64,000 nucleotides of DNA from Heterodontus francisci (taxonomy: Eukaryota). The position numbers and the translations under genes were made by a program. A model generated the notes under the pieces. That model was not told the origin of the DNA. It saw only the letters and a program-made list of their open reading frames with translations, and did not search any database. Position 1 is the stretch's first letter, and every line of letters begins with the position of its first letter. The stretch covers positions 66,520,862 through 66,584,861 of the forward strand of contig NC_090399.1 in the NCBI RefSeq assembly GCF_036365525.1. Reading direction: 5' to 3'. Below, piece after piece: positions 1-64,000 of the stretch.

Positions 1-3000
1 GTTCATGCCCAGATGTCTCTCTCTCTCTGGGGTTGGTGTTTTGGGGTTCATGCCCTGATGTCTCTCTCTCTGGGGTTGATGTTTTGGGGTTCATGCCCTG
101 ATGTCTCCCTCTTTGGGGTTGATGTTTTGGGGTTCATGCCCTGATGTCTCTCTTTCATTGGGGTTGATGTTTTGGGGTTCATGCCGATGTCTCTCTCTTT
201 GGGGTTGATGTTTTGGGGTTCATGCCCTGATGTCTCTCTCTCATTGGGGTTGATGTTTTGGGGTTCATGCCGATGTCTCTCTCTTTGGGGTTGATGTTTT
301 GGGGTTCATGCACTGATGTCTCTCTCTCTCTGGGGTTGATGTTTTGGGGTTCATGCCCTGATGTCTCTCTCTCTCTGGGGTTAATGTTTTGGGGTTCATG
401 TCCTGATGTCTCTCTCTCTCTGTGGGGTTGATGTTTTGGGGTTCATGCCCTGATGTCTCTCTCTCTCTCTGGGGTTGATGTTTTGGGGTTCATGCCCTGA
501 TGTCTCTCTCTCACTCTGGGGTTGATGTTTTGGGGTTCATGCCCTGATGTCTCTCGCTGTCTGTGGGGTTGATGTTTTGGGATTCATGCCCTGATGTCTC
601 TCTCTCTCTCTGGGGTTGATGTTTTGGGGTTCATGCCCTGATGTCTCTCTCTCTCTCTGTGGGGTTGATGTTTTGGGGTTCATGCCCTGATGTCTCTCTC
701 TCTGTGGCGTTGATGTTTTGGGGTTCATGCCCTGATGTCTCTGTCTCTGGGGTTGGTGTTTTGGGTTTCATGCCCTGCTGTCTCTCTCTCTGTGGGGTTG
801 ATGTTTTGGGGTTCATGCCCTGATGTCCATCTCTCTCTGCGGTTGGTGTTTTGGGGTTCATGCCCTGATGTCTCTCTCTCTGTGGGGTTGATGTTTTGGG
901 GTTCATGCCCTGATGTCCATCTCTCTCTCTCTGGGGTTCATGTTTTGGGGTTCATGCCCTGATGTCTCTCTCTCTCTGGGGTTGGTGTTTTGGGGTTCAT
1001 GCCCTGATGTCTCTCTCTCTGGGGTTGATGTTTTGGGGTTCATGCCCTGATGTCTCTCTCTTTCTCTTGGGTTGATGTTTTGGGGTTCATGCCCTGATGT
1101 CTCTCTCTCTCTGTGGGGTTGATGTTTTGGGGTTCATGCCCTGATGTCTTTTTCTCTGTGGGGTTGATGTTTTGGGGTTCATGCCCTCATGTCCATCTCG
1201 CTCTCTCTGGGGTTGATGTTTTGGGGTTCATGCCCTGATGTCTCTCTTTGGGGATGATATTTTGGGGTTCATGCCCTGATGTCTCTCTCTCTGTGGGGTT
1301 GATGTTTTGGGGTTCATGCCCTGATGTCTCTCTCTGGGGTTGATGTTTTGGGGTTCATGCCCTGATGTCTCTCTTCGGGGATGATATTTTGGGGTTCATG
1401 CCCTGATGTCTCTGTCTCTGTGGGGTTGATGTTTTGGGGTTCATGCCCTGATGTCCATGTCTCTCTCTCTGGGGTTGATGTTTTGGGGTTCATGCCCTGA
1501 TGTCTCTCTGTCTGGGGTTGATGTTTTGGGGTTCATGCCCTGATGTCTCTCTCTTTGGGGTTGATGTTTTGGGGTTCATGCCCTGATGTCTCTCTCTCTT
1601 TGGGGTTGATGTTTTGGGGTTCATGCCCTGATGTCTTTCTCTGGGGTTGATGTTTTGGGGTTCATGCCCTGATGTCTGTCTTTGGGGATGATATTTTGGG
1701 GTTCATGCCCTGATGTCTCTCTCTCTCTGGGGTTGATGTTTTGGGGTTCATGCCCTGATGTCCATCTCTCTCTCTCTGGGGTTGATGTTTTGGGGTTCAT
1801 GCCCTGATGTCTCTCTCTCTCTGTGGGGTTGATGTTTTGGGGTTCATGCCCTGATGTCCATCTCTCTCTCTCTGGGGTTGATGTTTTGGGGTTCATGCCC
1901 TGATGTCTCTCTCTCATTGGGGTTGATGTTTTGGGGTTCATGCCGATGTCTCTCTCTTTGGGGTTGATGTTTTGGGGTTCATGCACTGATGTCTCTCTCT
2001 CTCTGGGGTTGATGTTTTGGGGTTCATGCCCTGATGTCTCTCTCTCTCTGGGGTTAATGTTTTGGGGTTCATGTCCTGATGTCTCTCTCTCTCTGTGGGG
2101 TTGATGTTTTGGGGTTCATGCCCTGATGTCTCTCTCTCTCTCTGGGGTTGATGTTTTGGGGTTCATGCCCTGATGTCTCTCTCTCACTCTGGGGTTGATG
2201 TTTTGGGGTTCATGCCCTGATGTCTCTCGCTGTCTGTGGGGTTGATGTTTTGGGATTCATGCACTGATGTCTCTCTCTCTCTCTGGGGTTGATGTTTTGG
2301 GGTTCATGCCCTGATGTCTCTCTCTCTCTCTGTGGGGTTGATGTTTTGGGGTTCATGCCCTGATGTCTCTCTCTCTGTGGCGTTGATGTTTTGGGGTTCA
2401 TGCCCTGATGTCTCTGTCTCTGGGGTTGGTGTTTTGGGTTTCATGCCCTGCTGTCTCTCTCTCTGTGGGGTTGATGTTTTGGGGTTCATGCCCTGATGTC
2501 CATCTCTCTCTGCGGTTGGTGTTTTGGGGTTCATGCCCTGATGTCTTTCTCTCTGTGGGGTTGATGTTTTGGGGTTCATGCCCTGATGTCCATCTCTCTC
2601 TCTCTGGGGTTCATGTTTTGGGGTTCATGCCCTGATGTCTCTCTCTCTCTGGGGTTGGTGTTTTGGGGTTCATGCCCTGATGTCTCTCTCTCTGGGGTTG
2701 ATGTTTTGGGGTTCATGCCCTGATGTCTCTCTCTTTCTCTTGGGTTGATGTTTTGGGGTTCATGCCCTGATGTCTCTCTCTCTCTGTGGGGTTGATGTTT
2801 TGGGGTTCATGCCCTGATGTCTTTCTCTCTGTGGGGTTGATGTTTTGGGGTTCATGCCCTCATGTCCATCTCGCTCTCTCTGGGGTTGATGTTTTGGGGT
2901 TCATGCCCTGATGTCTCTCTTTGGGGATGATATTTTGGGGTTCATGCCCTGATGTCTCTCTCTCTCTGGGGTTGATGTTTTGGGGTTCATGCCCTGATGT

Positions 3001-6000
3001 CTCTCTCTGGGGTTGATGTTTTGGGGTTCATGCCCTGATGTCTCTCTTCGGGGATGATATTTTGGGGTTCATGCCCTGATGTCTCTGTCTCTGTGGGGTT
3101 GATGTTTTGGGGTTCATGCCCTGATGTCCATCTCTCTCTCTCTGGGGTTGATGTTTTGGGGTTCATGCCCTGATGTCTCTCTGTCTGGGGTTGATGTTTT
3201 GGGGTTCATGCCCTGATGTCTCTCTCTTTGGGGTTGATGTTTTGGGGTTCATGCCCTGATGTCTCTCTCTCTTTGGGGTTGATGTTTTGGGGTTCATGCC
3301 CTGATGTCTTTCTCTGGGGTTGATGTTTTGGGGTTCATGCCCTGATGTCTCTCTTTGGGGATGATATTTTGGGGTTCATGCCCTGATGTCTCTCTCTCTC
3401 TGGGGTTGATGTTTTGGGGTTCATGCCCTGATGTCCATCTCTCTCTCTCTGGGGTTGATGTTTTGGGGTTCATGCCCTGATGTCTGTCTCTCTCTGTGGG
3501 GTTGATGTTTTGGGGTTCATGCCCTGATGTCCATCTCTCTCTCTCTGGGGTTGATGTTTTGGGGTTCATGCCCTGATGTCTCTCTCTCTCTGTGGGGTTG
3601 ATGTTTTGGGGTTCATGCCCTGATGTCTCTCTCTCTCTCTGGGGTTGATGTTTTGGGGTTCATGCCCTGATGTCTCTCTCTCTGTGGGGTTGATGTTTTG
3701 GGGTTCATGCCCTGATGTCTCTCTCTCTCTCTGGGGTTGATGTTTTGGGGTTCATGCCCTGATGTCTCTCTCTCTCTCTGGGGTTGATGTTTTGGGGTTC
3801 ATGCCCTGATGTCTCTCTCTCTCTGTGGCGTTGATGTTTTGGGGTTCATGCCCTGATGTCTCTGTCTCTGGGGTTGGTGTTTTGGGTTTCATGCCCTGCT
3901 GTCTCTCTCTCTGTGGGGTTGATGTTTTGGGGTTCATGCCCTGATGTCCATCTCTCTCTCTCTGGGGTTCATGTTTTGGGGTTCATGCCCTGATGTCTCT
4001 CTCTCTCTGGGGTTGGTGTTTTGGGGTTCATGCCCTGATGTCTCTCTCTCTGGGGTTGATGTTTTGGGGTTCATGCCCTGATGTCTCTCTCTTTCTGTTG
4101 GGTTGATGTTTTGGGGTTCATGCCCTGATGTCTCTGTCTCTGTGGGGTTGATGTTTTGGGGTTCATGCCCTGATGTCCATCTCTCTCTCTCTGGGGTTGG
4201 TGTTTTGGGGTTCATGCCCTGATGTCTCTCTCTCTGGGGTTGATGTTTTGGGGTTCATGCCCTGATGTCTCTCTCTTTCTCTTGGGTTGATGTTTTGGGG
4301 TTCATGCCCTGATGTCTCTCTCTCTCTGGGGTTGATGTTTTGGGGTTCATGCCCTGATGTCTCTCTCTCTCTGGGGTTGGGGTTTTGGGGTTCATGCCCT
4401 GATGTCTCTCTCTCTCTGGGGTTGATGTTTTGGGGTTCATGCCCTGATGTCTCTCTCTCTCTGCGATTGATGTTTTGCGTTCATGCCCTGATGTCTCTCT
4501 CTCTGGGGTTGATGTTTTGGGGTTCATGCCCTGATGTCTCTCTCTCATTGGGGTTGATGTTTTGGGGTTCATGCCGATGTCTCTCTCTTTGGGGTTGATG
4601 TTTTGGGGTTCATGCACTGATGTCTCTCTCTCTCTGGGGTTGATGTTTTGGGGTTAATGCCCTGATGTCTCTCTCTTTGGGGTTGATGTTTTGGGGTTCA
4701 TGCCCTGATGTCTCTCTCTCTTTGGGGCTGATGTTTTGGGGTTCATGCCCTGATGTCTCTCTCTTTGGTGTTGATGTTTTGGGGTTCGTGCCCTGATGTC
4801 TCTCTCTCTCTGGGGTTGATGTTTTGGGGTTCCTGCCCTGATGTCTCTCTCTCTCTGTGGTTGATATTTTGGGGTTTTTGCCCTGATGTCTCTCTCTCTG
4901 GGGTTGATGTTTTGGGGTTCATGCCCTGATGTCTCTCTCTTTGGGGTTCATGCCCTGATGTCTCTCTCTCTTTGGGGTTGACGTTTTGGGGTTCATGCCC
5001 TGATGTCTCTCTCTCTCTGGGGTTGATGTTTTGGGGTTCATGCCCTGATGTCTCTCTCTTTGGGGTTGATGTTTTGGGGTTCTTGCCCTGATGTCTCTCT
5101 CTCTTTGGGGTTGATGTTTTGGGGTTCATGCCCTGATGTCTCTCTCTTTGGGGTTGATGTTTTGGGGTTCATGCCCTGATGTCTCTCTCTGGGGTTGATG
5201 TTTTGGGGTTCTTGCCCTGATGTCTCTCTCTCTCTCTGGGGTTGATGTTTTGGGGTTCATGCCCTGATGTCCATCTCTCTCTCTCTGGGGTTGATGTTTT
5301 GGGGTTCATGCCCTGATGTCTCTCTCTCTCTCTGGGGTTGATGTTTTGGGGTTCATGCCCTGATGTCTCTCTCTCTGGGGTTGATGTTTTGGGGTTCATG
5401 CCCTGATGTCTCTCTCTCTGTGGGATTGGTGTTTTGGGTTCATGCGCTGATGTCTCTCTCTTTCTCTGGGGTTGATGTTTTGGGGTTCATGCCCTGATGT
5501 CTCTCTCTCTGTGGTGTTGATGTTTTGGGGTTCATGCCCTGATGTCTCTCTCTCTGTGGTGTTGATGTTTTGGGGTTCATGCCCTGATGTCTCTCTCTTT
5601 GGGGTTGATGTTTTGGGGTTCATGCCCTGATGTCTCTCTCTGGGGTTGATGTTTTGGGGTTCTTGCCCTGATGTCTCTCTCTCTCTCTGGGGTTGATGTT
5701 TTGGGGTTCATGCCCTGATGTCCATCTCTCTCTCTCTGGGGTTGATGTTTTGGGGTTTATGCCCTGATGTCTCTCTCTCTCTGTGGGGTTGATGTTTTGG
5801 GGTTCATGCCCTGATGTCCATCTCTCTCTCTCTGGGGTTGATGTTTTGGGGTTCATGCCCTGATGTCTCTCTCTCTCTCTGGGGTTGATGTTTTGGGGTT
5901 CATGCCCTGATGTCTCTCTCTCTGGGGTTGATGTTTTGGGGTTCATGCCCTGATGTCTCTCTCTCTCTGGGATTGGTGTTTTGGGTTCATGCGCTGATGT

Positions 6001-7270
6001 CTCTCTCTTTCTCTGGGGTTGATGTTTTGGGGTTCATGCCCTGATGTCTCTGTCTCTGGGTTTGATGTTTTGGGGTTCATGCCCTGATGTCTCTCTCTCT
6101 GTGGTGTTGATGTTTTGGGGTTCATGCCCTGATGTCTCTCTCTCTGTGGTGTTGATGTTTTGGAGTTCATGCCCTGATGTCTCTCTCTCTGGGGTTGATG
6201 ATTTGGGGTTCATGCCCTGATGTCTCTCTCTCTCTCTGGGGTTGATGTTTTGGGGTTTTTGCCCTGATGTATCTCTCTCTGTGGGGTTGATGTTTTGGGG
6301 TGTTTGCCCTGATGTCTCTCTCTGTGGGGTTGATGTTTTGGGGTTCATGCCCTGAAGTTTCTCTCTGGGGTTGATGTTTTGGGGTTCATGCCCTGATGTC
6401 TCTCTCTATCTCTGGGGTTGATTTTTTCTGGTTCATGCCCTGATGTCTCTCTCTCTCTGGGGTTGATGTTTTGGGGTTCATGCCCTGATGTCTCTCTCTC
6501 TCTGGGGTTGATGTTTTGGGGTTCATGCCCTGAGGTCTCTCTCTGGGGTTGATGTTTTGGGGTTCATGCCCTGATGTCTCTCTCTCTGTGGGGTTGATGT
6601 TTTGGGGTTCATGCCCTGATGTCTCTCTCTCTCTGTGGGGTTGATATTTTGGGGTTCATGCCCTGATGTCTCTCTCTCTCTGGGGTTGATGTTTTGGGGT
6701 TCATGCCCTGATGTCTCTCTCTCTCTGGGGTTGATGTTTTGGGGTTCATGCCCTGAGGTCTCTCTCTGGGGTTGATGTTTTGGGGTTCATGCCCTGATGT
6801 CTCTCTCTCTGTGGGGTTGATGTTTTGGGGTTCATGCCCTGATGTCTCTCTCTCTCTGTTGGGTTGATATTTTGGGGTTCATGCCCTGATGTCTCTCTCT
6901 CTCTGGGGTTGATGTATTGGGGTTCATGCCCTGATGTCTCTCTCTCTCTGTGGGGTTGATATTTTGGGGTTCATGCCCTGATGTCTCTCTCTCTGTGGGG
7001 TTGATGTTTTGGGGTTCATGCCCTGATGTCTCTCTCTCTGTGGGGTTGATGTTTTGGGGTTCATGCCCTGATGTCTCTCTCTCTCTGTGGGGTTGATGTT
7101 TTGGGGTTCATGCCCTGATGCCTCTCTCTCTTTGGGGTTGATGTTTTGAGGTTCATCTCCTGATGTCTCTCTCTGGGGTTGATGTTTTGGGGTTCATGCC
7201 CTGATGTCTCTCTCTCTTTGGGATTGATGTTTTGGGGTTCATGCCCTGATGTCTCTCTCTCTCTCTCTGC
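1..7270. repeat. Intron-1 minisatellite, ~45-bp unit GGGGTTGATGTTTTGGGGTTCATGCCCTGATGT(CT)n, roughly 160 copies, open at the window start
   Basis: Directly visible tandem unit with a variable CT tract. ORF-track pairs 537/2210, 631/2304, 735/2408 and 1621/3294 show a 1673-bp higher-order duplication. Confidence 0.98.
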
Positions 7271-7277
7271 GTTTCAG

Positions 7278-7538
7278 GCTCTCATTCGCTCCGGTTTTTC
7301 TTTACCTCAATGACCCCGATTCCCGGTCTCCCAGATTTTTTTTCTGTCGGTTATGTGGATGAGGCTCAGATCGATTACTACGATAGCAACCTTCAGAAGG
7401 CGACCTTTCGGCAGCGGTGGATGTCGGAGAGTCCGGGTCCTGATTTCTGGCAGGAACAGACACAGAGGCTGCGGATTTGGGAGCAGACTGCAAAGGCCCA
7501 GATTCAGACCCTCATGAAACGGAACAACCAGTCGGCCG
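7278..7538 (+). CDS. MHC class I alpha1 exon: (G)SHSLRFFFTSMTPIPGLPDFFSVGYVDEAQIDYYDSNLQKATFRQRWMSESPGPDFWQEQTQRLRIWEQTAKAQIQTLMKRNNQSA(G)
   Basis: Acceptor (ct)n-gcgtttcag at 7277 and donor GTGAGT at 7539. Contains the GSHSLR start, VGYVD, conserved Trp residues, R84 and the N86-Q-S glycosylation sequon. Confidence 0.96.
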
Positions 7539-7684
7539 GTGAGTCATCCCCCCTCTCGGGGATCAGGGCTTGGAATGGGGCCTCAGACTAGGAGCGGGTG
7601 GGAGTACGTGATCCGGGGTCACGGTGATCCGGGTGGCTCCGCCCACTCCCTCATCACCCCTAACCTCTGGGGTCTCTGTGAACC

Positions 7685-7775
7685 GTGCTCTGATTGGCTG
7701 TGTGTATGTGTGTTTGCCATGGGACCTCTGATTGGCTGTGTGTGTTTGATTGGCAGTGGAGAGAGGGCGGGGTCT
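7685..7775. repeat. Short degenerate CTGATTGGCTGTGTGTGTTTG repeat, left half of a unit that resumes at 9062-9279
   Basis: CTGATTGGCT at 7690-7699 and 7728-7737, TGATTGG at 7747, GGGCGGGG at 7765-7772. The same unit forms the alpha2 acceptor. Confidence 0.7.
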
Positions 7776-7869
7776 GTGTGAGCCAGGCACTGATTTTGTC
7801 AATAAAAACAAAACAAAAAATGTTGTAAATACTCAGGAACTCTGGCAGCATCTGTGGAGAGAGAAGCAG

Positions 7870-7904
7870 AGTTAACATTTCAGGTCAGTGACCCTTCATC
7901 AGAA
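7870..7904 (-). ncRNA. Minimal type I hammerhead ribozyme motif of the Penelope-like terminus (stem I broken by the CR1 insertion)
   Basis: The minus strand reads UU-CUGAUGA-AGGGUCACUGACCU-GAAA-UGUU-AACU: both catalytic boxes intact, with a GGUC/GACC stem II. Confidence 0.6.
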
Positions 7905-8105
7905 ACATAGAAAATCGGAGCAGGAGTAGGCCATTCGGCCCTTCAGCCTGCTTCGCCATTCATGATGATCATGGCTGATCATCGAACTCAGTGATCTGTT
8001 CCTGCTTTTGCCCCATACCCTTTGATCCCTTCAAACCCAAGAGCTTTTTCTAACTCCTTCTTGAAAACGTACAATGTTTTGGCCTCAACTGCTTTCCTTG
8101 GTAGC
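7905..8105 (-). mobile_element. 5'-truncated CR1-type LINE 3' end nested in the Penelope fragment
   Basis: The minus frame gives KAVEAKTLYVFKKELEKALGFEGIKGYG, typical of the CR1 ORF2 C-terminus, followed by a 3' UTR and catagaaa tail. The flanks rejoin as catcagaactggca. Confidence 0.8.
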
Positions 8106-8589
8106 GAACTGGCAGAGCTAGAAATGTGATAGGTTTTAAGCAAGTAAAGTGGGGGTGGGGCAAGAGATAAGAAAAGCAAAGGTGTTGATAGGACAGAGAG
8201 TCACAGAGAATAACTGACCAGAAGGTCATGGAGCAAAGGCAAATGGTCTGTTAATGGTGTGGTAAAAGACAAAGCGTTAGTTCAGAGAAGGTGTTAATTG
8301 ACAGAAAACTGAACAGCCCTGGCCCAAAGCACAAACATGAAAAAAACACAGTGGGCATGCACATGGTAAGAAAAATGAATGATGTAACAGACTAAAATAA
8401 AATAAAAAGAACGAAGAAAAAGGAAAAATACTGAAAATAAATTGGGGGGGGTGGGGGGTGGGGGGTGGTGGTGGGGGGTGGCCTGACATGCTCTGAAATT
8501 ATTAAACTCAATATTCAGTTGCTACAACCTGCCGGACTGAACATTGAGTTTGATCATTTCAGAGCATGACAGGCTCCCCCTTTTCAGCG

Positions 8590-9060
8590 ATGGTAATGCT
8601 TGTGAACATCAGGGGGAAATGGTTAGATATGCTCTTGTTGGAGATGGTCATTGCCTGGCACTTGTGTGCCACTTATCAGCCCAAGCCTGGATATTGTCCA
8701 GGTCTTGCTGCATTTCTACACAGACTGCTTCAGTATCTGAGGAGTCACGAATGGTGCTGAACATTGTGCAATCATCAGTGAACATCCCCACTTCTGGACT
8801 TTATGATTGAAGGAAGGTCATTGATGAAGCAGCTGAAGATGTTTGGGCCCAGGACACTACCCTGAGGATCTCCTGCATTGATGTCCTGGAGCTCAGATGA
8901 TTGACCTCCAACAACCACAACCATCTTCCTTTGTGCTAGGTATGGCTCCAGCCAGCGGTAGGTTTTCTGCCTGATTCCCATTGACTGCAGTTTTGCTGGG
9001 GATGCTTGATGCCGTACTCGGTCAAATGCTGCCTTGATGTCAAGGGCAGTCACTCTCACC
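8590..9060 (-). mobile_element. Non-LTR retrotransposon (CR1/L2 clade) reverse transcriptase fragment, frameshifted
   Basis: ALDIKAAFDRV, AGDPQGSVLGP and FINDL motifs in ORF 8775-9059, continuing in another frame as MFTDDCT...QDLDNIQAWADKW. Confidence 0.88.
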
Positions 9061-9061
9061 T

Positions 9062-53780: not shown

Positions 53781-53821
53781 CTGTCTCTTGCTGACTTATT
53801 TCTGATCCGTTTTACTCTCAG

Positions 53822-54097: not shown

Positions 54098-54194
54098 GTA
54101 AGAGGAACAGTGACTGTAGGGGCAGTGTCTGTTTGTGAGATTTCAAGATGTTTATAATCACCTCTCCTCACTGTGTCTCCCAAAATCGATCGCC

Positions 54195-54480: not shown

Positions 54481-54554
54481 CTTTCCACTTTGCCATTTCC
54501 ATGGGCTTCGGTTTTACTCCCAAGTCTATTATTTGGCCCTTTTAATCAAGGTGT

Positions 54555-54950: not shown

Positions 54951-54973
54951 TAAAGTACCTTTTCAAAGTCCAT

Positions 54974-55308
54974 ATAGAAAGACCAGGTGCTACTCCTCGA
55001 GCTTGCATTGATGTTCACTGGAGCATTGGAGCAGGCCATGTTGGCATGAGAGCAGGGGGATGATGTTGAAATGACCAGTGACCGGAAGCTCAGGGTCATA
55101 CTTTCGAACTGAGCGGAGGTATTCCGCAAAGCGGTCACCCAGTCTGCGTTTGGTCTCCCCAATGTAGAGGAGACCACATTGTGAGCAGTGAATACAGTAT
55201 ACTACATTGAAAGTACAAGTAAATCACTGCATCACCTGAAAGGAGTGTTTGGGGCCTTGGATATTGAGGAGGGAGGAGGTAAATGGGCAGGTATTACACC
55301 TCCTGCAA
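54974..55308 (-). mobile_element. Inverted partial copy of the Penelope GIY-YIG region
   Basis: The reverse complement aligns by eye with 56450-56792 (ttgcaggaggtgtaatacctgcccatttacc ... ggggagaccaaacgcagactgggtgaccgc). Confidence 0.85.
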
Positions 55309-55329
55309 ACAGGACTGTCCTGGTAGACC

Positions 55330-57205
55330 CATTGTTTCAGCCTGCTCCTGCCCCACTGAACTTATTTCTTCCTATCTTGACTCTCTTTTCTCCGCTAGTC
55401 CAGTCTCTTCCCACCTACATCCGTGACTCTTCGGATGCCTTACGTCATTTTGACAATTTCCAGTTTCCTGGCCCCAACCGCCTCCTCTTCACTATGGACG
55501 TCCAATCTCTCTACACCTCCATCCCCCACCAGGATAGTTTGAGGGCTCTCCGCTTCTTCCTGGAACAGAGGCCCAACCAGTCCCCATCCACCGCCACCCT
55601 CCTCCGCCTGGCTGAACTTGTTCTCACATTGAACAACTTCTCCTTCAACTCCAAGCACTTCCTTCAAGTAAAAGGTGTCGCTATGGGTACCCGCATGGGT
55701 CCTAGTTATGCCTGTCTTTTTGTGGGATATGTCGAACATTCCTTGTTCCAGTCCTACTCAGGCCCCCTCCCCCAACTCTTTTTCCGGTACATTGATGACT
55801 GTATCGGTGCCGTTTCCTGCTCCCGCCCCGAACAGGAAAACTTTATCAACTTTGCTTCCAGTCTCCACCCTTCTCTCAGCTTTACATGATCCATCTCTGA
55901 CACTTCCCTTCCCTTCCTCGACTTCTCTGTCTCCATCTCTGGGGATAGGCTGTCTACTAATATTCATTATAAACCCACCAACTCCCACAGCTACCTCGAC
56001 TACACTTCTTCACACCCTACCTCCTGTAAGGAGTCAGTCGCATTCTCCCAGTTTCTCCGTCTCCGACGCATCTGCTCTGATGATGCTACCTTCCATGACA
56101 GTGCTTCTGATATGTCTTCCTTTTTCCTCAACCGAGGATTCCCCCCCACTGTTGTTGACAGGGCCCTAAACCTTGTCCGGCCCATTTCCTGCACCTCTAC
56201 CCTCACCCCTTCCCCTTCCTCCCAGAACTGCCACAGGGATCCCCTTGTCCTCACTTTCCACCCCACCAGCCTCCACATCCAAAGGATCATCCTCCGCCAT
56301 TTCCACCACCTCCAGCGTGATGCCAAACACATCTTCCCCTCCCTTCCCCTGTCAGCATTCCGAAGGGATCATTCCCTCTGTGACACCCTGGTCCACTCCT
56401 CCATTACCCCCACCACCTCGTCCCCGTCCCATGGCACCTTCCCCTGCAATTGCAGGAGGTGTAATACCTGCCCATTTACCTCCTCTCTCCTCACTATCCC
56501 AGGCCCCAAACACTCCTTTCAGGTGCGATTTACTTGAACTTTCAATGTAGTATACTGTATTCGCTGCTCACAATGTGGTCTCCACTACATTGGGGAGACC
56601 AAACGCAGACTGGGTGACCGCTTTGCTGAGCACCTCCGCTCAGTCCGCAAGCAGGACCCCGAGCTTCTGGTTGCTTGCCATTTCAACATCGTCTCCCCAC
56701 CCTCCTGCCTGTCCACATTTCTGTCTTTGGCCTGCTCCAATGTTCCAGTGAACATCAACACAAGCTCGAGAAACAGCACCTGATCTTTCTATTAGGCACT
56801 CTACAGCCTTGTGAACTGAACATTGAGTTCAATAACTTCAGAGCATAACTGGGATTTTTTTTATATTTTATTTTATTTTTTAACCATGTGCCCGTTTTTC
56901 ATGTAGTCAGAACTGCTCGTTATTCTGCTATTAACCCTCTCTCTGAACTAATGCTTTGTCTTCCACCACAAGCATTAACACACTCTTTGCCTTTGTCCCA
57001 GGACAGCTTTGTTATTTAATCTCTCCTGCCCTATCAAACACCTTCCCCTTTGTTCTCTCTCCCCTTCACTTGCTTAAAACCTAATTATTTTCTCATCTTT
57101 GCCAGTTCTGTTGAAATGTGACAGACCTGAAACGTTAACTCTGTTCCTCTCTCCACAGATGCTGCCAGACCTGCTGAGTATTTCCAGCACTCTTTGTTTT
57201 TATTT
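55330..57205 (+). mobile_element. Penelope-like retroelement, 5'-truncated and inactivated (RT + GIY-YIG endonuclease + 3' terminus)
   Basis: TMDVQSLYTSIP, QVKGVAMGTRMGPSYA, FFRYIDD, LPFLD, YKPT..HSYLDY, a Cys-rich linker, and VVYCIRCSQCGLHYIGETKRRLGDRFAEH. Premature TGA at 55887-55889 and a frameshift near 56530. Confidence 0.92.
57104..57140 (+). ncRNA. Degenerate hammerhead ribozyme motif in the Penelope 3' terminus
   Basis: AGUU-CUGUUGA-AAUGUGACAGACCU-GAAA-CGUU-AACU. Stem I (AGUU/AACU) and the palindromic ACGU are retained; the CUGAnGA core is mutated and stem II is eroded. Confidence 0.5.
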
Positions 57206-57209
57206 ATGG

Positions 57210-57371
57210 TCAACACTGTTATTGGGTAAAAGTACAGATGAACAGTGGGAAGTGTTCAAAAGATAATTTAGCTTAAAGCAAGACCAGTATGTACCCATAA
57301 GGGGAAGAGGTCTACTTGACAAAAGAGGAGAGAGATAATATAAAATTCAAGATAAAAGCAAAGAATAGTGT
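57210..57371 (+). mobile_element. Old sense-strand CR1-like fragment, apparently continuing at 60912-61137
   Basis: Remnants EQWEVFK and QDQYVPIRG here, and ENKEMIDFLNNYF near 61090-61130, match the inter-domain region of CR1 ORF2. Confidence 0.5.
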
Positions 57372-57737
57372 ACAAAGAACAGTACAGCACAGGAACAGGC
57401 CATTTGGCCCTCCAAGCCTGCGCCGATCTTGATGCCTGCCAAAACTAACACCTTCTGCACTTCCGGGGCTCATATCCCTCTATTCCCTTCCTATTCATAT
57501 ATTTGTCAAGATGTCTCTTAAACATCGCTATCGTATCTGCTTCCACCACCTCCCCCGGCAGCAAGTTCCAGGCACTCACCACCCTCTGTGTAAAGAACTT
57601 GCCTCGCACATCCCCTCTAAACTTTGCCCCTCGCACCTTAAACCTATGTCCCCTAGTAACTGACTCTTCCACCCTGGGAAAAAGCTTCTGACTATCCACT
57701 CTGTCCATGCCGCTCATAACTTTGTAAACCTCTATCA
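57372..57737 (-). mobile_element. Young 5'-truncated CR1 LINE 3' end
   Basis: IEVYKVMSGMDRVDSQKLFP...TRGHRFKVRG...FFTQRVVSAWNLLP; nearly identical to 59877-60256. Confidence 0.92.
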
Positions 57738-59811
57738 CACTCTGCACACCTCTCGTATACACTTGACTATGCTTGCACAATCTCGGCGCTCCACCACACA
57801 TGTTCCATCACCGAGCACACTCTTAGCCATATTAGGGCACACTTCTTCAACACTTTCACCTCTAGCACCTGCTGCCATCTCCTAGCACACTCTTGGGCAT
57901 ACTGTGGGCACAGCAGCAGACATTTAGGCAGCTTTACCGCACTCTTGGGCATCCGTAGTAAACACTTGACGTCCCAGCACACGCCTGACAACCTCGAGCA
58001 CCTGTTTGGACACCATTATCTGGGCTAACCGTGCACCTCCTTGCAAACCTGACTGGTTCACCCGAGCACAAACCTGCTGACTCTTAGCATACACTTGGTT
58101 GTCCGTAGCACACTACGTCATTCTCTAGCACCCTCTTGGACAGACCGAACACACTCTGGACATACTGAGCACTCCCCTTGACACCTCTATCACGCACTGA
58201 GCTTCCCTACCACACTATTGCGCACCCCAGCACACCCTTGGGCACCTCAATACATACTTCAGCACCCGTACCAAACTCTTCGGCAGCCCCAGAACATTCT
58301 GGGTACTCCTGACATTCAGTTACCATTATGTAGCACACTCTTGGGAACGTCTATTACACAACTGGTCACGCATAGTACAGTCTGGTCTAACGGAGCACAC
58401 ACTTGGAAACCTCGAGCATACTCTGGGCACCCTGTGTGTACACTTGTAACACACACTTGGGCACGCCGAGCTCCTTATTGTGCAATACTAGCAGAATCTG
58501 GGCACTCCTGGCACACGTGCCATCTCCTAGCACACAACTGGGCACAGTTAATACATTTTAGGCACACCAAGCACGCCTTGGCCATCTTGACACACACTTG
58601 GTCACCACGAGAACACGCCTGTTGCACACTTTTGTCATTCTCTAGCACACTCTTGGATACCCCTATCAGTCTCTGGGCACACGAATCACACTCTTTGGCA
58701 CTGCTACCACACACTGGGCGCCCCAAAACACTCTGGGCACCTGAGCACCATCTTGGACACCACTGGCACACTCTTGCCATCCCCAAGTACACTCTTGGGC
58801 AACCCGGAACACTCACTGTCACTTATCACACTCTGGACACCCCCAGAACACTCCTTGGTACCCCTATCATACTCTTGGGCTCTCCTAGTTCACTCTTGTG
58901 CGCCACAAAACATTCTTGGTTACCCCCAGTACACTCTTGGCCACCCATATTACAATATTGGGCATCCCGAATACAATCTTGGGTAGCACTAGTACACTCT
59001 TGGGCACCCCTATCACCTTATGGGCACTCCAATCACACTCTGGGCACTCCGGACATCCTTTGTGCAAAGTAGCCACACTTGGGCAGTCCTAGCACACACT
59101 TGGACACCCTAGCACACACTTGCCATCCTCTAGCACATGTTGGTTACCAAAGCACATTCTTGGGGACCTGTAGCAGACTCTTGTCTTTTGTTACCACCCT
59201 CTTGGACAGACCTAGGACACTGTGGGCACAGCGATCACTCTCATTGACACACCTGTCTCACACTGGGCACCCCGGCACACTCTGAGCACTCTAGTACAAT
59301 CTTGGGCACCTCTATCACACTCTTGGGAAAGCCTAGCACACACTTGAACAACCCTAGCCAATCTGGGCACTCCTAGCACACACTTGCCTTCACCCAGCAC
59401 ACGATTGGTTACCCCGAACACACACTGGGCACACTGTATACCCCCTTGGGTACTTCTCACGCTCACTAGGGCACCCATAGAACACTTTCGAGTACTCCTG
59501 CACTCTCTTAGATTCAGATATTACACTCTTGGTCACCCTTAGAACATTCTTGGGCACACCTTGAACACCCTTTGCACACTCTTGGCAAACTAAGCTCACA
59601 CCTCCGCACCTCTATCACACACCGGGCTCCCCTATCACACACATGTGCACCACAGCACTCTCTTGGACACACCTAGAACACTCTTGCCATCCCCTACCAC
59701 ACTGTTAGGCTCCCCTAACACACTCTGGGCACACCGTTGACACCCTTGTCCACCTGTAGCACATAGTGGGCTCCCCAGTACACTCTTGTGTACACAACAC
59801 ACTCTTGGACA
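57738..59811. repeat. Highly degenerate CA-rich satellite built on CACACTCTTGGGCACC-like short units
   Basis: Recurrent cacactcttgg, gggcac and ctagcacac motifs with strong C+A strand skew over about 2 kb. Confidence 0.8.
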
Positions 59812-59876
59812 CTAAAATAAAAGCAAAATAGTGCAGATGCTGGAAATCTGAAATAAAACCAAAACGTATTTCCAGC

Positions 59877-60911
59877 ACAAAGAACAAAGAACAAAGAACA
59901 GTACAGCACAGGAACAGGCCATTCGGCCCTCCAAGCCTGCGCCGATCTTGATGCCTGCCGAAAGTAACACCTTCTGCACTTCCGGGGCCCATATCCCTCT
60001 ATTCCCTTCCTATTCATATATTTGTCAAGATGTCTCTTAAACGTCGCTATCATATCTGCTTCCACCACCTCCCCCGGCAGCAAGTTCCAGGCACTCACCA
60101 CCCTCTGTGTAAAGAACTTGCCTCGCACATCCCCTCTAAACTTTGCCCCTCGCACCTTAAACCTATGTCCCCTAGTAACTGACTCTTACACCCTGGGAAA
60201 AAGCTTCTGACTATCCACTCTGTCCATGCCGCTCATAACTTTGTAAACCTCTATCATGTCACCCCTCCACCTCCGTCGTTCCAGTGAAAACAATCCGAGT
60301 TTTTCCAACCTCTCCTCATAGCTAATGCCCTCCAGACCAGGAAACATCCTGGTAAACCTCCTCTGTACCCTCTCCAAAGCCTCCACGGCCTTCTGGTAGT
60401 GTGGCGACCAGAATTACACGCAATATTCTAAGTGTGGCCTAACTAAGGTTCTGTACAGCTGCAACATGACTTGCCAATTTTTATACTCTATGCCCCGACC
60501 GATGAAGGCAAGCATGCCGTATGCCTTCTTGACTACCTTATCCACCTGCGTTGCCACTTTCAGTGACCTGTGGACCTGTACGCCCAGATCTCTCTGCCTG
60601 TCAATACTCCTAAGGGTTCTGCCATTTACTGTATACTTCCCACCTGCATTAGACCTTCCAAAATGCATTACCTCACATTTGTCCGGATTAAACTCCATCT
60701 GCCATTTCTCCGCCCAAGTCTCCAACCGATCTATATCCTGCTGTATCCTCTGACAATCCTCATCACTATCCGCAACTCCACCAACCTTTGTGTCGTCCGC
60801 AAACTTACTAATCAGACCAGCTACATTTTCCTCCAAATCATTTATATATACTACAAACAGCAAAGGTCCCAGCAGAACACCACTAGTCACATCCCTCCAT
60901 TCAGAAAAACA
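59877..60911 (-). mobile_element. CR1 LINE 3' kilobase (RT C-terminal half), inactivated
   Basis: GPLLFVVYINDL, KFADDTK, MEFNPDKC, LVRPHLEYCV*FWSPH and LERVQRRFTRM, with an (ACAAAGA)n tail. Stop at 60414-60416 and a deletion in the PQGS motif. Confidence 0.93.
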
Positions 60912-61137
60912 GATCCAGCGGACTAGGAGGGATAGAGAGAACAGCAAAGGAAGACAAAATAGAGAGCAAGTGCAGCAAAAATGAAATATGAATGGAAATT
61001 TGAGAGAATCAAGATGAACAGCTTTTACAGTTCTATCAGAAGAGAAAGGGTAACACAGCCCTGTAAAAATCAATGCAGGAATATTACAATTGAAAATAAG
61101 GAAATGATAGACTTTTTGAATAACTACTTTGTCATCG

Positions 61138-61390
61138 AATCATAGAAACTTACAGCACAGAAAGAGGCCATTCAGCCCATTGTGTCTGTGCTGGCTCTTT
61201 GAAAGAGCAGTTATTCTTTGTCTCACATCTCTGCTTTCTGTCCCTAATGCTGTCAGTTCCTTATCCTTAAATACCTGTCCAACTCCCTTTTTTCAAATGT
61301 TTATGGATTCAGCTTCCACCATCTTCTCAGATCGAGCATTCCCGATCCCAACAACTGAGTGAAAAATTATTCTCCTCATCTCCCCTCTCG
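61138..61390 (-). mobile_element. Older CR1 3' end fragment
   Basis: aatcatagaa...acagcacagaaagaggccattcagccca tail and gcttccaccat...ttctcctcatctcccctct, homologous to the other CR1 ends. Confidence 0.7.
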
Positions 61391-61399
61391 ATCAGACTT

Positions 61400-62780
61400 C
61401 ATCACATTGAACTCTATCTGCTGAGCTTATTCCTTTCTCACCATCCTGTTGTAGTTATCCTGAGGACTATACTTTACCAAGTTTCATATCACCTGTAAAC
61501 TTTACAATGCTGCTCTCCACACTCGAGTCTAGGTCTTTTATAAAAGTTGCAGAGTAATGGACCCAAAACTGACCCTTGGGAAATAACACTGCAACACACC
61601 TCCCAGTCTGAAAAACATCCATCACCCTTTGTTTCCTGTCACTGAGACAGTTTTGTATCCATCATGTCACTTTCCTGTTAATTCCATGGGCTGACATCAT
61701 CTTAAGCCTGCTGTGTGACACTTTGTCAAGTGCCTTTCAAAAGTCCATATATACAACATCTACTGCACGACCTTGATCAACCTTCTCTGAATTCAGTCAA
61801 ATTAGTCAGACATGATTTACCATTAACAAATCCGTGCTGGCTCTCCTTCATTAACCCAGTTTATTTTGCCTCTGATAATGGTTTCCAATAACATCCTCAC
61901 CACTGATGTTTGGCTGACTGGCCTATAGTTTCCTGGTTTATCCCTCTCCCCTTTCTGGAACAGTGTGGTATAACATTAGCGACCCTCCAGTCCTCCGGCA
62001 GTATTCCTGTGAGGATTGAAAGATTGTGACCAATGCCCCTGCTGTTTCTACATTTGCATCTTTCAGTAACCTCGGATGCATTCCATCCGGACGGGTGACT
62101 TTCCTGACTGTGACATTAATCTTTAATAAAGATCGATGCAGAGTGCTCGTTTTGTAGCTGTGCCCTGCCCTCTGACTCCATATGATGATCTCCTTTTCAG
62201 TCCCTAACTGGCTCCATCCTTCCTCAATTACCCCCTTTACTACTTGTATGTTTATAAAACTAATCCACTGGGTCAGATTCCTTTTCAACTCCCTGAAATT
62301 AGCCCTCCTCCAGTTGAATAATTACAAGCTTGATTTTGCCGTGTCTATTTCTGTAAAGCCGATGATATTGTGATCACTATTGCCCAAATGCGCCCCCACT
62401 GAAACATTCCCCACTTCATTCCCTCGGACTCGATCCAGCACTGCTTCCTTCCTCATTGGGCTGGAAACATACTGATCAAGAATGATCTCCTGTGCACATT
62501 TCAGGAATTCCTCCCCTTCTGTCCTTCACACTGTTACTATCCCAGTCTATATTTGGATATCACCACTGTACATTTCTTGCACCTTTCTGCAATTTGCTCC
62601 TGTAACACCTTCCCGCTATTTGGTGACCTGTACTGTACACCCAGCAGTGAAATCGCTCCTCTATTTGTCTTTAACTCTATCCAATTAGATTATGTCTTTG
62701 AATCCTCCAGCACATCACCTCTTTCCAGTGCTGTAACAATATTTTTGATCAATACCGTCACCCCGTCTTTCCTTTCCTAG
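61400..62780 (-). mobile_element. Decayed CR1 ORF2 fragments (RT and endonuclease remnants)
   Basis: Minus-strand remnants VDVVYMDF, SQHGF, DKPGNYRP, PDGMHPRLLK and HLGNSDH in the expected order, with many lesions. Confidence 0.72.
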
Positions 62781-63140
62781 AAACCTCCTACCTCCCATCA
62801 CTCCACTACCAATGAGTCTATTCTGAGTCTGATGTGGGGATGAATCACTCGTGTAGGTGACTGGAAATGTCTTTGGAATGATGTGGAATTCCAATATCTG
62901 CAGACAAGCAACCCCTGCATTTATTTATCTCCTTTACTGCAGATAAACATCCCAAAGTGCTTCACAGGAGTGTAATCCAATGACACTGAAGCTTTCTAAC
63001 CTATAACATGCTCTGCTCAGACTGCCCATCACATCACAGACTCGAATCTCATTCAACCTCAGGCCCCGCTTTGGTACAATTGCTTCTGAAGGAGCAGTGA
63101 CTGTGGTTATTCATTCATCTCTTCCTCATTCCCCCCACAG

Positions 63141-63266
63141 ACGGGACATTCCGAGATACTCCAGGATCTCCAGAAGGGACAAATCTGGGTTTGATTGTTG
63201 GAATTGTTGTTGCTGCCGTCGCTGTGATTGCTCTTGTCATCGGTGCTGTTGTGTGGAAGAGGAGAG
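63141..63266 (+). CDS. MHC class I connecting peptide/transmembrane exon: DGTFRDTPGSPEGTNLGLIVGIVVAAVAVIALVIGAVVWKRR
   Basis: Strong acceptor cttcctcattccccccacag, phase 1 giving W-D-G after alpha3. A ~23-residue hydrophobic helix, basic WKRR stop-transfer, and donor GTAGGG at 63267. Too short for the ORF track. Confidence 0.93.
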
Positions 63267-63425
63267 GTAGGGAATGAGGGCAGAATCTGTCACTCTCGGG
63301 TATGAGCAGCTTAAAATATTACAGCACAAGGTCAGAACATTAGACACTTCACTACACAGGTGGGAAACTCACATACAGCCCAGTGATGGACAGGGAGTGA
63401 GGGGACTGGGAGAATGGGATAGGGA

Positions 63426-64000
63426 GTGAGCTGTTTGTAACTGATGTTCCCCCTGTGTGTGTACAGTAAGTTTGTGTGGGTGAGGGGGGGTGAGCTGTTT
63501 GTCACTGAAGTTCCCCCTGTGTGTGTACAGTAAGTTTGTGTGGGTGAGGGGGGAGGGGGGAGCTGTTTGGAACTGAAGTTCCCCCTATGTGTGTACAGTA
63601 AGTTTGTGTGGGTGAGGGGGGGTGGGGTGAGCTGTTTGTAACTGAAGTTCCCCCTGTGTGTGGACAGTAAGTTTGTGTGGGTGAGGGGGGGGGGTGTGAG
63701 CTGTTTGTAACTGACGTTCCCCCTGTGTGTGTACAGTAAGTTTGTGTGGGTGAGGGGGGGGTGAGCTGTTTGTAACTGAAGTTCCCCCTGTGTGTGTACA
63801 GTAAGTTTGTGTGGGTGAGGGGGGGGTGAGCTGTTTGTAACTGAAGTTCCCCCTGTGTGTGTACAGTAAGTTTGTGTGGGTGAGGGGGGGGGGGGTGAGC
63901 TGTTTGTAACTGACGTTCCCCCTGTGTGTGTACAGTAAGTTTGTGTGGGTGAGGGGGGGGTGAGCTGTTTGTAACTGAAGTTCCCCCTGTGTGTGTACAG
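63426..64000. repeat. 64-69-bp minisatellite GTGAGCTGTTTGTAACTGAAGTTCCCCCTGTGTGTGTACAGTAAGTTTGTGTGGGTGA(G)n, 9 copies, open at the window end
   Basis: The CAG of successive copies ends at 63466, 63530, 63598, 63667, 63736, 63801, 63866, 63935 and 64000. Length varies mainly in the G run. Confidence 0.97.

What the first reader, a model, noticed from the sequence alone, without database searches (positions are those of the whole stretch)
1..64000. Splice-signal-derived tandem arrays at the exon borders of one MHC class I gene
Seen: five unrelated arrays each abut or lie near an exon border, and four are built from the adjacent type of splice signal. Array 1-7270 is branch point plus pyrimidine tract of alpha1. 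9062-9279 is the alpha2 acceptor. 9553-10015 is the alpha2 donor. 63426-64000 is branch/pyrimidine/CAG plus GTAAGT. The 43.7-kb satellite stops about 40 bp from the alpha3 acceptor. All exons stay intact and in frame. Inference: this locus repeatedly amplifies exon-flanking sequence, giving copy-number-variable splice-signal arrays that could tune splicing efficiency, expression timing or exon exchange between class I paralogues. I do not know a described equivalent, but cannot exclude that this is general in GC-rich shark chromosomes.
Basis: partly seen in the sequence, partly recalled or inferred. Interest (0 to 1): 0.8.

Follow-up and report, generated by a model that had tools for sequence, protein, structure and literature searches.

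The report
Repeat-swollen introns of shark MHC gene
An expressed shark MHC class I gene has had its once-short introns blown up by tandem repeats, two of which are copies of the splice junctions of one exon; the gene is still spliced at the true sites, and this kind of junction-copying repeat is already known from human and amphioxus genes.

Summary
The arrays are real: tandem repeats fill 83.5% of the window, around four intact, phase 1-1 exons of an MHC class I gene (alpha1, alpha2, alpha3, TM). The splice-signal reading holds only in part.

- **True junction copies:** two arrays flank alpha2. The first unit of the donor array is the last 11 nt of the exon plus GTGAGT. The last unit of the degenerate acceptor array ends in the real CAG.
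- **Positional only:** the 45-bp array stops 13 nt before alpha1. It supplies the pyrimidine tract and a candidate branch point, but it has no AG and no exon homology.
- **No demonstrable junction origin:** the 43.7-kb 47-bp satellite and the 67-bp array.
a sixth array that lies mid-intron.

RNA contigs from the reference animal use the authentic alpha1 donor and alpha2 acceptor. Contigs also end at the alpha1 acceptor (within 3 nt) and exactly at the alpha2 donor. No pseudo-site use was seen.

The ancestral introns were probably about 200 nt, so arrays beside borders are expected. Described equivalents exist: human F7, IFI6, CBS, LMNB2 and PDGF boundary minisatellites, and amphioxus "mirages".

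This scan had already noted the same phenomenon in neighbouring class I genes of this genome (s1-872915, s1-872932, s1-873570). No function is shown.

The parts
1..7264 (+). 45-bp tandem array filling the 3' end of intron 1 (leader to alpha1). Unit GTTCATGCCCTGATGTCTCTCTCTCTCTGGGGTTGATGTTTTGGG, about 162 units in the window, about 97% identity per position, with variation mostly in (CT)n length. Only 6 AG dinucleotides occur in 7264 nt.
7235..7277 (+). Last array unit (CTGAT at 7244-7248 as candidate branch point, then a CT run) plus 13 unique nt (ctgcgtttcag) ending in the alpha1 acceptor CAG at 7275-7277.
   Evidence: RNA contig X7 record 23 leaves the genome at 7275.
7278..7538 (+). alpha1 exon (261 nt, phase 1-1); donor CCG|GTGAGT.
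   Evidence: RNA joint 7537/8 to 9279/80.
7669..7800 (+). Upstream part of a degenerate acceptor-type array in intron 2 (units of about 38-62 bp, containing CTCTGATTGGCTGTGTGTGTTTGATTGGCAG). Pseudo-acceptor CAG at 7754-7756.
7801..9061 (-). Retroelement insertion (approximate limits) that splits the acceptor array. It holds a SINE/LINE tail and a reverse-transcriptase fragment at 8775-9059 (-).
   Evidence: Very high multi-copy RNA depth.
9062..9279 (+). Downstream part of the acceptor-type array. Its last unit, 9249-9279, is 94% identical to 7726-7756 and ends in the true alpha2 acceptor CAG at 9277-9279. Further CAG copies lie at 9131-9133 and 9191-9193.
   Evidence: RNA joint.
9280..9552 (+). 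alpha2 exon (273 nt, phase 1-1); donor CGG|GTGAGT.
   Evidence: RNA contigs end exactly at 9552.
9542..10026 (+). Donor-junction minisatellite of about 15 units of about 33 bp, with two unit types forming a 67-bp dimer. Unit 1 is the last 11 nt of the alpha2 exon plus GTGAGTG. Ten pseudo-donors match at least 7 of 9 positions, and five of them have G|GTGAGT (9687, 9830, 9863, 9890, 10002).
10084..53778 (+). 47/48-bp satellite of about 928 units, about 93% identical to the consensus with no gradient and no higher-order period. It makes up 98.7% of intron 3.
53779..53821 (+). 43 unique nt holding the pyrimidine tract, CTGAC/CTGAT and the acceptor CAG of alpha3. It shows a weak match (TCTGATCC) to the satellite unit.
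53822..54097 (+). alpha3 exon (276 nt, Ig C1-set, phase 1-1).
54098..63140 (+). Intron 4, rich in transposable elements. It has no array at either border. It holds a decayed Penelope-like element and LINE reverse-transcriptase fragments.
58642..59726 (+). Degenerate 21-bp array in the middle of intron 4, between two copies of the same repeated element. It is not near any exon border.
63141..63266 (+). Connecting-peptide and transmembrane exon (126 nt, phase 1-1); donor GAG|GTAGGG.
63422..64000 (+). 64-69-bp array (8.7 units, runs off the window). The unit carries TTCCCCCTGTGTGTGTACAGTAAGT and TGG|GTGAGG followed by a variable G run. It starts 155 nt after the TM donor.

Best explanation
This is an expressed shark non-classical MHC class I gene. 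Earlier scan notes call the species horn shark; I did not test that. Its originally short introns (about 150-250 nt once arrays and transposable elements are subtracted) were hit several times, independently, by tandem duplication followed by minisatellite or satellite expansion.

In an intron that short, almost any seed duplication lies on or next to a splice signal. Two seeds spanned the borders of the alpha2 exon. One had its left breakpoint 11 nt inside the exon and produced a donor-junction array. The other had its right end at the acceptor AG and produced an acceptor array. These are boundary minisatellites of the F7-IVS7 or 'mirage' type. A third seed ended 13 nt before the alpha1 acceptor, so its last unit now serves as the pyrimidine tract and probably the branch point. 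The 47-bp satellite and the 67-bp array are ordinary intronic arrays.

The spliceosome uses the authentic, exon-proximal sites. The reiterated pseudo-sites are silent passengers that leave with the intron. Expansion is tolerated because only the exons and a few tens of flanking nucleotides are constrained.

Shown: the anatomy, the junction homology and the use of the authentic sites. Inferred: short ancestral introns, slippage or unequal exchange favoured by G-run and (CT)n low-complexity sequence, and neutrality.
For: - **Arrays and exons:**
- **Donor array:** unit 1 (9542-9575) matches a following unit at 28 of 34 positions. Nine of the 11 exon-derived nucleotides are shared.
- **Acceptor array:** 9249-9279 is 94% identical to 7726-7756, and a retroelement splits the array.
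- **RNA contigs of the reference animal:** a GT..AG joint 7537/8 to 9279/80 occurs in two runs. Contigs of 617 nt lie on 9338-9552 and stop at the true donor; the remaining 402 nt equals alpha3 (276) plus TM (126). Another contig leaves the genome at the alpha1 acceptor.
- **Cost of pseudo-donors:** a TGA lies two codons past the true donor.
- **Residual unique intron 3:** only 111 nt, because the satellite is 98.7% of it.
- **No sign of constraint within units:** the 45-bp and 47-bp units show flat conservation. AG scarcity in the 45-bp array (6 observed for 16 mutational paths) is in the range of the other dinucleotides absent from the unit (AA 4/6, AC 7/13, CG 21/23, TA 17/22).
- **Precedents with the same behaviour:** PMC1557585, PMC3087553.
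Against: - Tandem repeats at 83.5% of a 64-kb genic window, with six separate arrays in one gene, are far more than ordinary introns carry. I could not measure the genome-wide background.
- Earlier scan notes (untested here) report the same habit in neighbouring class I genes and in Ig and TCR loci. That could point to a locus-class-specific process and not simple neutrality.
- All five units share G runs and CTGA (p about 0.03).
- Contigs drop rare isoforms, so low-level pseudo-site use is not excluded.
- The contigs that fit with no differences could in principle come from an identical paralogue.
Confidence: 0.72

Rival explanations
1. The arrays are functional splice-signal devices. Repeated branch-point, pyrimidine-tract, acceptor and donor modules would tune splicing efficiency or timing. 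For example, G-run-rich donor-array units could act as intronic enhancers that mark the 5' splice site of a 44-kb intron, or the long arrays could delay expression.
For: The donor array is packed with G runs directly downstream of the true donor. G triplets downstream of donors are known intronic enhancers (established knowledge). In the first 130 nt the pseudo-donors are weakened (GGATGAGT, CAA|GTGAGG), and the strong ones lie further away. RNA of the 45-bp array folds far better than shuffles (z -4.9), which could mask its decoy pyrimidine tracts.
Against: No alternative junctions appeared among the RNA contigs shown. No position within the units is conserved above the rest. AG depletion is explained by unit composition. 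The alpha1 donor, alpha3 donor and TM acceptor work without arrays. In the F7 model the pseudo-sites are simply silent (PMC1557585).
Confidence: 0.1
2. The arrays are recombination substrates. Long homogeneous tracts in the same intron of tandem class I paralogues would promote unequal crossing-over and shuffle the alpha1, alpha2 and alpha3 exons between genes.
For: Earlier scan notes (untested here) describe a 30-bp minisatellite made of the alpha2 exon end plus its donor in the neighbouring class I gene (s1-872932). That is the same kind of unit as here, so paralogues may share arrays. RNA contigs 95-99% identical to these exons, some at very high depth, show that close paralogues exist.
Against: I could not read any paralogue's intron, so shared arrays are not shown. 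The five arrays here are private within the window (no 12-mer occurs outside its own array). No recombinant structure was observed.
Confidence: 0.1
3. The arrays are an assembly artefact, with array lengths or positions misassembled.
For: Long arrays are hard to size. Several arrays reported in this genome have similar lengths of about 44-48 kb (scan notes, untested).
Against: DNA contigs of four runs from the same sample hold 51-54% of the sampled words of 7201-10100, borders included. The exon-array junctions are exact and the exons intact. RNA contigs agree with all the exon borders tested. The window contains no N.
Confidence: 0.03

Closest known systems
Human boundary-spanning minisatellites: F7 IVS7 37-bp VNTR, IFI6 (6-16) intron 2, CBS IVS13, LMNB2, PDGF intron 4 (PMC1557585)
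   Same: The first monomer spans the exon-intron boundary (4 exon nt in F7, 11 here), so the donor is reiterated in the intron. The most upstream, authentic donor is used and the downstream pseudo-sites stay silent.
   Different: The units here have diverged, and several pseudo-donors are mutated. Length polymorphism was not tested. The same exon also carries an acceptor-side array. The host is a shark MHC class I gene.
Amphioxus 'mirages': minisatellite-like duplications of intron-exon boundaries in Adh3 and globin genes (PMC3087553)
   Same: Both 5' and 3' exon borders can be duplicated in tandem. Many units keep AG or GT signals. Regular splicing is not disturbed. The phenomenon recurs across genes of one genome.
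   Different: Mirage units carry clear exon pieces, whereas the acceptor array here stops at the AG. The mirage arrays reported (for example 3 and 6 units in the two BflGb6 haplotypes) are far shorter than the 928-unit satellite lying beside the arrays here.
Satellite-filled gigantic introns of Drosophila Y-linked fertility genes kl-3 and kl-5 (PMC6508621)
   Same: The introns consist almost wholly of tandem satellite, yet the gene is transcribed through them and spliced correctly.
   Different: The scale is 44 kb and more than 50 kb here, against megabases there. The units are 45-47 bp and not simple satellites. The gene is an autosomal immune gene. No dedicated expression programme is known.
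AG-exclusion zones with distant branch points upstream of some human exons (own knowledge: Gooding et al. 2006)
   Same: A long AG-poor stretch precedes the alpha1 acceptor. The last AG lies 127 nt upstream, and only 6 AG occur in 7.26 kb.
   Different: The AG poverty here is a by-product of the repeat unit. Use of a distant branch point was not tested.

Membership tests
Boundary-spanning minisatellite (F7 IVS7 / mirage type): alpha2 donor array | Head-to-tail array whose terminal unit spans the exon-intron boundary and includes exon nucleotides. | tested here: met
   Unit 1 is 9542-9575: 11 exon nt plus GTGAGTG. It matches the unit at 9609-9642 at 28 of 34 positions.
Boundary-spanning minisatellite (F7 IVS7 / mirage type): alpha2 donor array | The authentic splice site is reiterated as pseudo-sites in the intron. 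| tested here: met
   Ten GT sites match the 9-nt donor consensus at 7 or more positions, and five of them are G|GTGAGT.
Boundary-spanning minisatellite (F7 IVS7 / mirage type): alpha2 donor array | The authentic, exon-proximal site is the one used in mRNA. | tested here: met
   Contigs from four runs of the reference animal's sample, labelled 'RNA?' by the tool, end their match exactly at 9552 and continue elsewhere. No pseudo-site joint is listed. Contigs cannot exclude rare isoforms.
Boundary-spanning minisatellite (F7 IVS7 / mirage type): alpha2 donor array | Length polymorphism between alleles. | not tested
   Reads were laid on RNA runs. An X5 contig that joins 9665 to 9988 could be a shorter allele, a paralogue or a collapsed repeat.
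Boundary-spanning minisatellite: alpha2 acceptor array | The terminal unit contains the true acceptor and the array repeats it. | tested here: met
   9249-9279 is 94% identical to 7726-7756. CAG copies lie at 7754-56, 9131-33, 9191-93 and, for the true site, 9277-79.
Boundary-spanning minisatellite: alpha2 acceptor array | The unit includes exon nucleotides. | tested here: inconclusive
   Only a displaced GGATT follows one copy (9134-). Homology otherwise stops at the AG.
Boundary-spanning minisatellite: 45-bp array at alpha1 | The unit contains the splice site (AG) or exon sequence. | tested here: not met
   The unit has no AG. There is no homology to 7265-7320 (z 0.3). The array ends 13 nt before the exon.
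Boundary-spanning minisatellite: 47-bp satellite and 67-bp array | The unit is homologous to the adjacent junction. | tested here: inconclusive
   The 47-bp unit against the alpha3 acceptor flank gives z 2.1, p 0.05 (shared TCTGATCC). The 67-bp unit against the TM donor region gives z 1.3. The exon downstream of the 67-bp array lies outside the window.
Satellite-filled giant intron (Drosophila kl-gene type) | The intron consists almost wholly of tandem satellite and is nevertheless removed correctly. | tested here: met
   The satellite is 98.7% of the 44,269-nt intron 3. The RNA contigs continue for 402 nt beyond the alpha2 donor, which equals alpha3 plus TM by arithmetic.
Satellite-filled giant intron (Drosophila kl-gene type) | Megabase scale and a dedicated expression programme. 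| tested here: not met
   Intron 3 is 44 kb. Intron 1 is more than 50 kb according to scan notes only. An expression programme cannot be tested with these tools.
Recursive splice sites | A pyrimidine tract followed by AG|GTRAGT inside the long intron. | tested here: not met
   Only four AGGTRAG sites occur in the window, and none has a pyrimidine-rich upstream stretch.
MHC class I heavy chain gene | alpha1 and alpha2 (MHC_I) exons, a C1-set alpha3 exon and a TM exon, all phase 1-1. | tested here: met
   Pfam PF00129 at 5e-17 and 1e-20, and PF07654 at 8e-15. The best solved relative of alpha2 is 6lup_A.

The most novel reading that the evidence does not exclude
Multigene immune loci of this shark (MHC class I and II, Ig kappa, TCR) may share a locus-class-specific process. 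It would repeatedly seed tandem duplications on short spacers bounded by conserved signals (splice junctions, recombination signals) and inflate them to arrays of tens of kb. Arrays shared between paralogues would then act as long homology tracts for exon or segment shuffling, or as timing or insulating spacers. On that reading the arrays are a feature of how these gene families evolve, not neutral litter.
Probability: 0.1. Interest if true: 0.7.

Novelty: new member of a known kind. Interest (0 to 1): 0.36.

Why it matters
The gene gives a natural vertebrate test case for splice-site choice. A true donor is followed by ten look-alikes, a true acceptor is preceded by three, and a 44-kb intron that is 98.7% satellite is still removed accurately.

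It also documents that shark non-classical class I genes can exceed 100 kb because of private satellites. The main paper on elasmobranch MHC organisation that I checked does not mention this (PMC10751288 contains neither 'intron' nor 'satellite').

There is a practical consequence. Such genes are easily split or missed by annotation and by short-read assembly.

If the habit proved specific to immune multigene families, it would bear on how those families diversify. Nothing found here shows that it is.

Tried and rejected
- **Unit-versus-junction homology:** Smith-Waterman with shuffles, each array unit against all eight junction regions. Only the donor array scored against its own junction (z 3.3). 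It scored equally against the G-rich region after the TM donor (z 3.1), so part of that signal is composition.
- **Selection against AG in the 45-bp array:** rejected. AG is not clearly rarer than the four other dinucleotides that the unit lacks.
- **Position-specific constraint inside the 45-bp and 47-bp units:** none. There is also no higher-order repeat or edge gradient in the satellite.
- **Recursive splice sites:** none found.
- **Rfam and tRNA scans of the window:** nothing.
- **Word search with the alpha2 exon alone:** no candidates, because of the length filter. I therefore could not fetch paralogous or orthologous loci, and the comparison of introns between genes or species was not done.
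- The joined-protein step was left out.
- **Big representative-protein search:** not used, because the protein is not in doubt.
- **The search of earlier findings by sequence, with units of both big arrays:** blank.
- **Shared CTGA and G-run motifs among the units:** marginal (p about 0.03, post hoc), and not used as evidence.
Full report
**What is in the window**

The window has no N. It holds four exons of an MHC class I heavy-chain gene on the + strand:

| Exon | Coordinates | Acceptor CAG | Donor GT |
|---|---|---|---|
| alpha1 | 7278-7538 | 7275-77 | 7539-40 |
| alpha2 | 9280-9552 | 9277-79 | 9553-54 |
| alpha3 | 53822-54097 | 53819-21 | 54098-99 |
| connecting peptide/TM | 63141-63266 | 63138-40 | 63267-68 |

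All four are phase 1-1. Pfam gives MHC_I for alpha1 (5e-17) and alpha2 (1e-20), and C1-set for alpha3 (8e-15). The best solved relative of alpha2 is chain 6lup_A, named MHC class I protein. The joined-protein step was left out.

Earlier notes of this scan call the species horn shark and the gene non-classical. They place its leader exon about 51.5 kb before the window, with the 45-bp array filling more than 48 kb of intron 1 (s1-872046, s1-872105). I did not test those statements.

**The arrays**

TRF and my own wrap-around alignments give the following.

- **45-bp array, 1-7264.** About 162 units at about 97% identity per position. Nearly all the variation is in (CT)n length.
- **33-bp array, 9542-10026.** About 15 units of two types that form a 67-bp dimer.
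- **47/48-bp satellite, 10084-53778.** About 928 units at about 93% identity to the consensus. The profile is flat along the array, with no higher-order period.
- **64-69-bp array, 63422-64000.** It runs off the window.
- **Degenerate array in intron 2.** The repeat finder shows it at 7669-7800 and 9062-9279, split by a retroelement insertion of about 1.26 kb. That insertion carries a reverse-transcriptase fragment at 8775-9059 on the minus strand.
It is a degenerate 21-bp array at 58642-59726, in the middle of the TE-rich intron 4 and far from any exon.

Together the arrays cover 53,436 of 64,000 nt (83.5%). The satellite alone is 98.7% of the 44,269-nt intron 3. The units are unrelated to one another, and none of their 12-mers occurs outside its own array.

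**Which arrays are really built from a splice junction**

*Donor array.* This is a true junction array. Split at its ACTGAGA anchor, the first unit is ACTGAGACCGG|GTGAGTGAATGGGGAGTGGGGGT. That is the last 11 nt of the alpha2 exon, then the real donor, then 23 intron nt in all. It matches the unit at 9609-9642 at 28 of 34 positions, including 9 of the 11 exon nucleotides. Ten further GT sites match the 9-nt donor consensus at 7 or more positions. Five are G|GTGAGT, at 9687, 9830, 9863, 9890 and 10002. The reading frame hits TGA two codons after the true donor, so any pseudo-donor would give a truncated product.

*Acceptor array.* This too is a junction array. The 31 nt ending in the true acceptor (9249-9279) are 94% identical to 7726-7756. 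CAG-ending copies also lie at 9131-33 and 9191-93. Homology stops at the AG. The array is old (65-94% identity) and predates the retroelement that splits it.

*45-bp array.* It stops 13 nt before alpha1. Its last unit places CTGAT (A at 7247, 30 nt before the acceptor G at 7277) and a CT run where a branch point and pyrimidine tract belong. The unit has no AG, and it shows no homology to the unique acceptor remnant and exon start (z 0.3). The striking AG poverty (6 in 7264 nt) follows from the unit. Relative to the number of single-substitution paths, AG (6 observed for 16 paths) is not clearly rarer than the other absent dinucleotides: AA 4/6, AC 7/13, CG 21/23, TA 17/22.

*47-bp satellite.* It ends 43 nt before alpha3 and shares only TCTGATCC with that flank (z 2.1, p 0.05).

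*67-bp array.* It does carry ...TTCCCCCTGTGTGTGTACAGTAAGT... and TGG|GTGAGG. It starts 155 nt after the TM donor and shows no homology to that region (z 1.3). Whatever junction might have seeded it lies beyond the window.

In sum, two of the five arrays are junction-derived, one is positionally co-opted, and two are undetermined. Three of the eight borders in the window have no array (alpha1 donor, alpha3 donor, TM acceptor).

**Is the gene spliced at the true sites**

The look-up of sequencing runs found four runs from the same sample as the best DNA holders. The tool labels them 'RNA?'. Laid on 7201-10100, they show the following.

- A GT..AG joint from 7537/8 to 9279/80 appears in two runs, on contigs with no differences from the window. 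This also shows that the runs contain spliced RNA.
- Contigs of 617 nt in three runs, and of 334 nt in the fourth, lie on 9338-9552. They stop matching exactly at the true donor.
- The unmatched 402 nt of the 617-nt contigs equals 276 + 126, the lengths of alpha3 and TM. That is arithmetic, not a seen alignment.
- A 229-nt contig leaves the genome at 7275, at the alpha1 acceptor, with 134 nt elsewhere.
- No joint from a pseudo-donor or into a pseudo-acceptor is among the rows shown.

Three caveats apply. These are contigs, which drop rare isoforms. Ten joints were not shown. An identical paralogue could also have produced them. Low depth over 9626-10013, and one X5 contig joining 9665 to 9988, cannot be interpreted: they could reflect pre-mRNA, a shorter allele, a paralogue or repeat collapse.

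**Is border abutment more than chance**

Subtracting the arrays leaves 68 + 43 = 111 unique nt in intron 3. Intron 2 is 1741 nt. About 1261 nt of it are retroelement and about 350 nt are degenerate array, which leaves about 130 unique nt. The ancestral introns were therefore probably about 150-250 nt, as in class I genes of other vertebrates (inference).

A 33-62-bp seed dropped at random into such an intron lies within 45 nt of a border about half the time or more. Abutment therefore needs no special mechanism. What is unusual is the number and size of the expansions. I could not compare these with the genome background.

**Mechanism**

The best reading is passive. Repeated tandem duplication and expansion (slippage, unequal exchange) struck short introns whose sequence near the splice sites is low-complexity: G runs after donors, and CT or TG runs before acceptors. 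Expansion was tolerated because everything except the exon-proximal signal is dispensable.

Choice of the authentic donor fits the 5'-to-3' preference for the most upstream site shown experimentally for the F7 minisatellite (PMC1557585).

Hints that could support a function are weak:

- G-run density in the donor array.
- Weakened pseudo-donors in the first 130 nt.
- Strong predicted self-pairing of 45-bp-array RNA (z -4.9).
- CTGA and G runs shared by all five units (p about 0.03, post hoc).

**Comparison with what is known**

Minisatellites whose first monomer spans an exon-intron boundary are described for human F7, IFI6 (6-16), CBS, LMNB2 and PDGF. Their pseudo-sites are mostly or wholly silent (PMC1557585). 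In amphioxus, tandem duplications of both 5' and 3' exon borders are called 'mirages' and recur across genes without disturbing splicing (PMC3087553). Satellite-filled giant introns that are still spliced are known from Drosophila Y-linked genes (PMC6508621).

The main paper on elasmobranch MHC organisation contains neither 'intron' nor 'satellite' (PMC10751288). My searches found no description of satellite-swollen shark MHC introns.

**Earlier notes of this scan**

These are leads that I did not test. The same phenomenon was already noted, and followed up, in neighbouring class I genes:

- s1-872915: 122 kb downstream, a gene with three exons in more than 60 kb of repeats, one repeat family built from an exon plus its splice site.
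- s1-872932: a 30-bp minisatellite made of the alpha2 exon end plus its donor.
- s1-873570: 172 kb upstream, a 137-bp alpha1-border repeat in 14 copies.

Ig kappa V-J spacers and TCR recombination signals were noted as similarly inflated (for example s1-872822, s1-872357). This suggests a habit of the genome or of its multigene families, but those notes are biased towards immune genes.

**Verdict**

The junction-derived origin holds for the two alpha2 arrays. The functional interpretation is unsupported. The kind of structure is known. The finding is of moderate interest as a clean natural splice-choice model and as a note on shark MHC gene architecture.

Noticed in passing
window 7690-7754 and 9167-9203: All five window matches to YTGATTGGY lie in the intron-2 array. 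This motif is an inverted CCAAT box, like the Y box of MHC promoters. It is probably just part of the repeat unit, but it amounts to a small cluster of possible NF-Y sites inside the gene.
   Followed up: partly
window 54950-56800: Intron 4 holds a decayed Penelope-like retroelement. It has a reverse-transcriptase ORF (55188-55886, RVT_1 1.2e-6), a weak GIY-YIG match after an in-frame stop (56538-56780, E 3.5e-4) and an inverted partial copy of its tail at 54950-55177.
   Followed up: partly
window 57312-57801 and 59705-60210, with 58642-59726 between them: Two near-identical copies of one repeated element, in the same orientation, bracket a degenerate 21-bp array (unit CTAGTACACTCTTGGGCACCC). 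The array may be internal to a composite element.
   Followed up: no
window 7298-7394 and 9335-9431: RNA contigs at 95-99% identity pile up at very high depth on parts of alpha1 and alpha2. One 125-nt contig carries six differences (7370-7434). Close, more strongly expressed class I paralogues or alleles therefore exist in the same animal.
   Followed up: no
window 1-7264: RNA of the 45-bp array is predicted to fold much better than shuffles (z -4.9). Its CT runs pair with the G/U-rich half of neighbouring units. Contigs matching the array's last units (7201-7264) are present in two of the four runs laid.
   Followed up: partly
window 9338-9552 and beyond: In three runs the 617-nt RNA contig ends, by arithmetic, exactly at the end of the TM exon. 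A branch in the assembly graph there could mean alternative downstream exons, intron retention or paralogue divergence at the start of the cytoplasmic tail. That is where the 67-bp CAGTAAGT array begins.
   Followed up: no
window 7278-7538 and 9280-9552: Reading the translation by eye, positions that are Tyr in classical class I (7, 59, 171) are Phe here.
   Followed up: no
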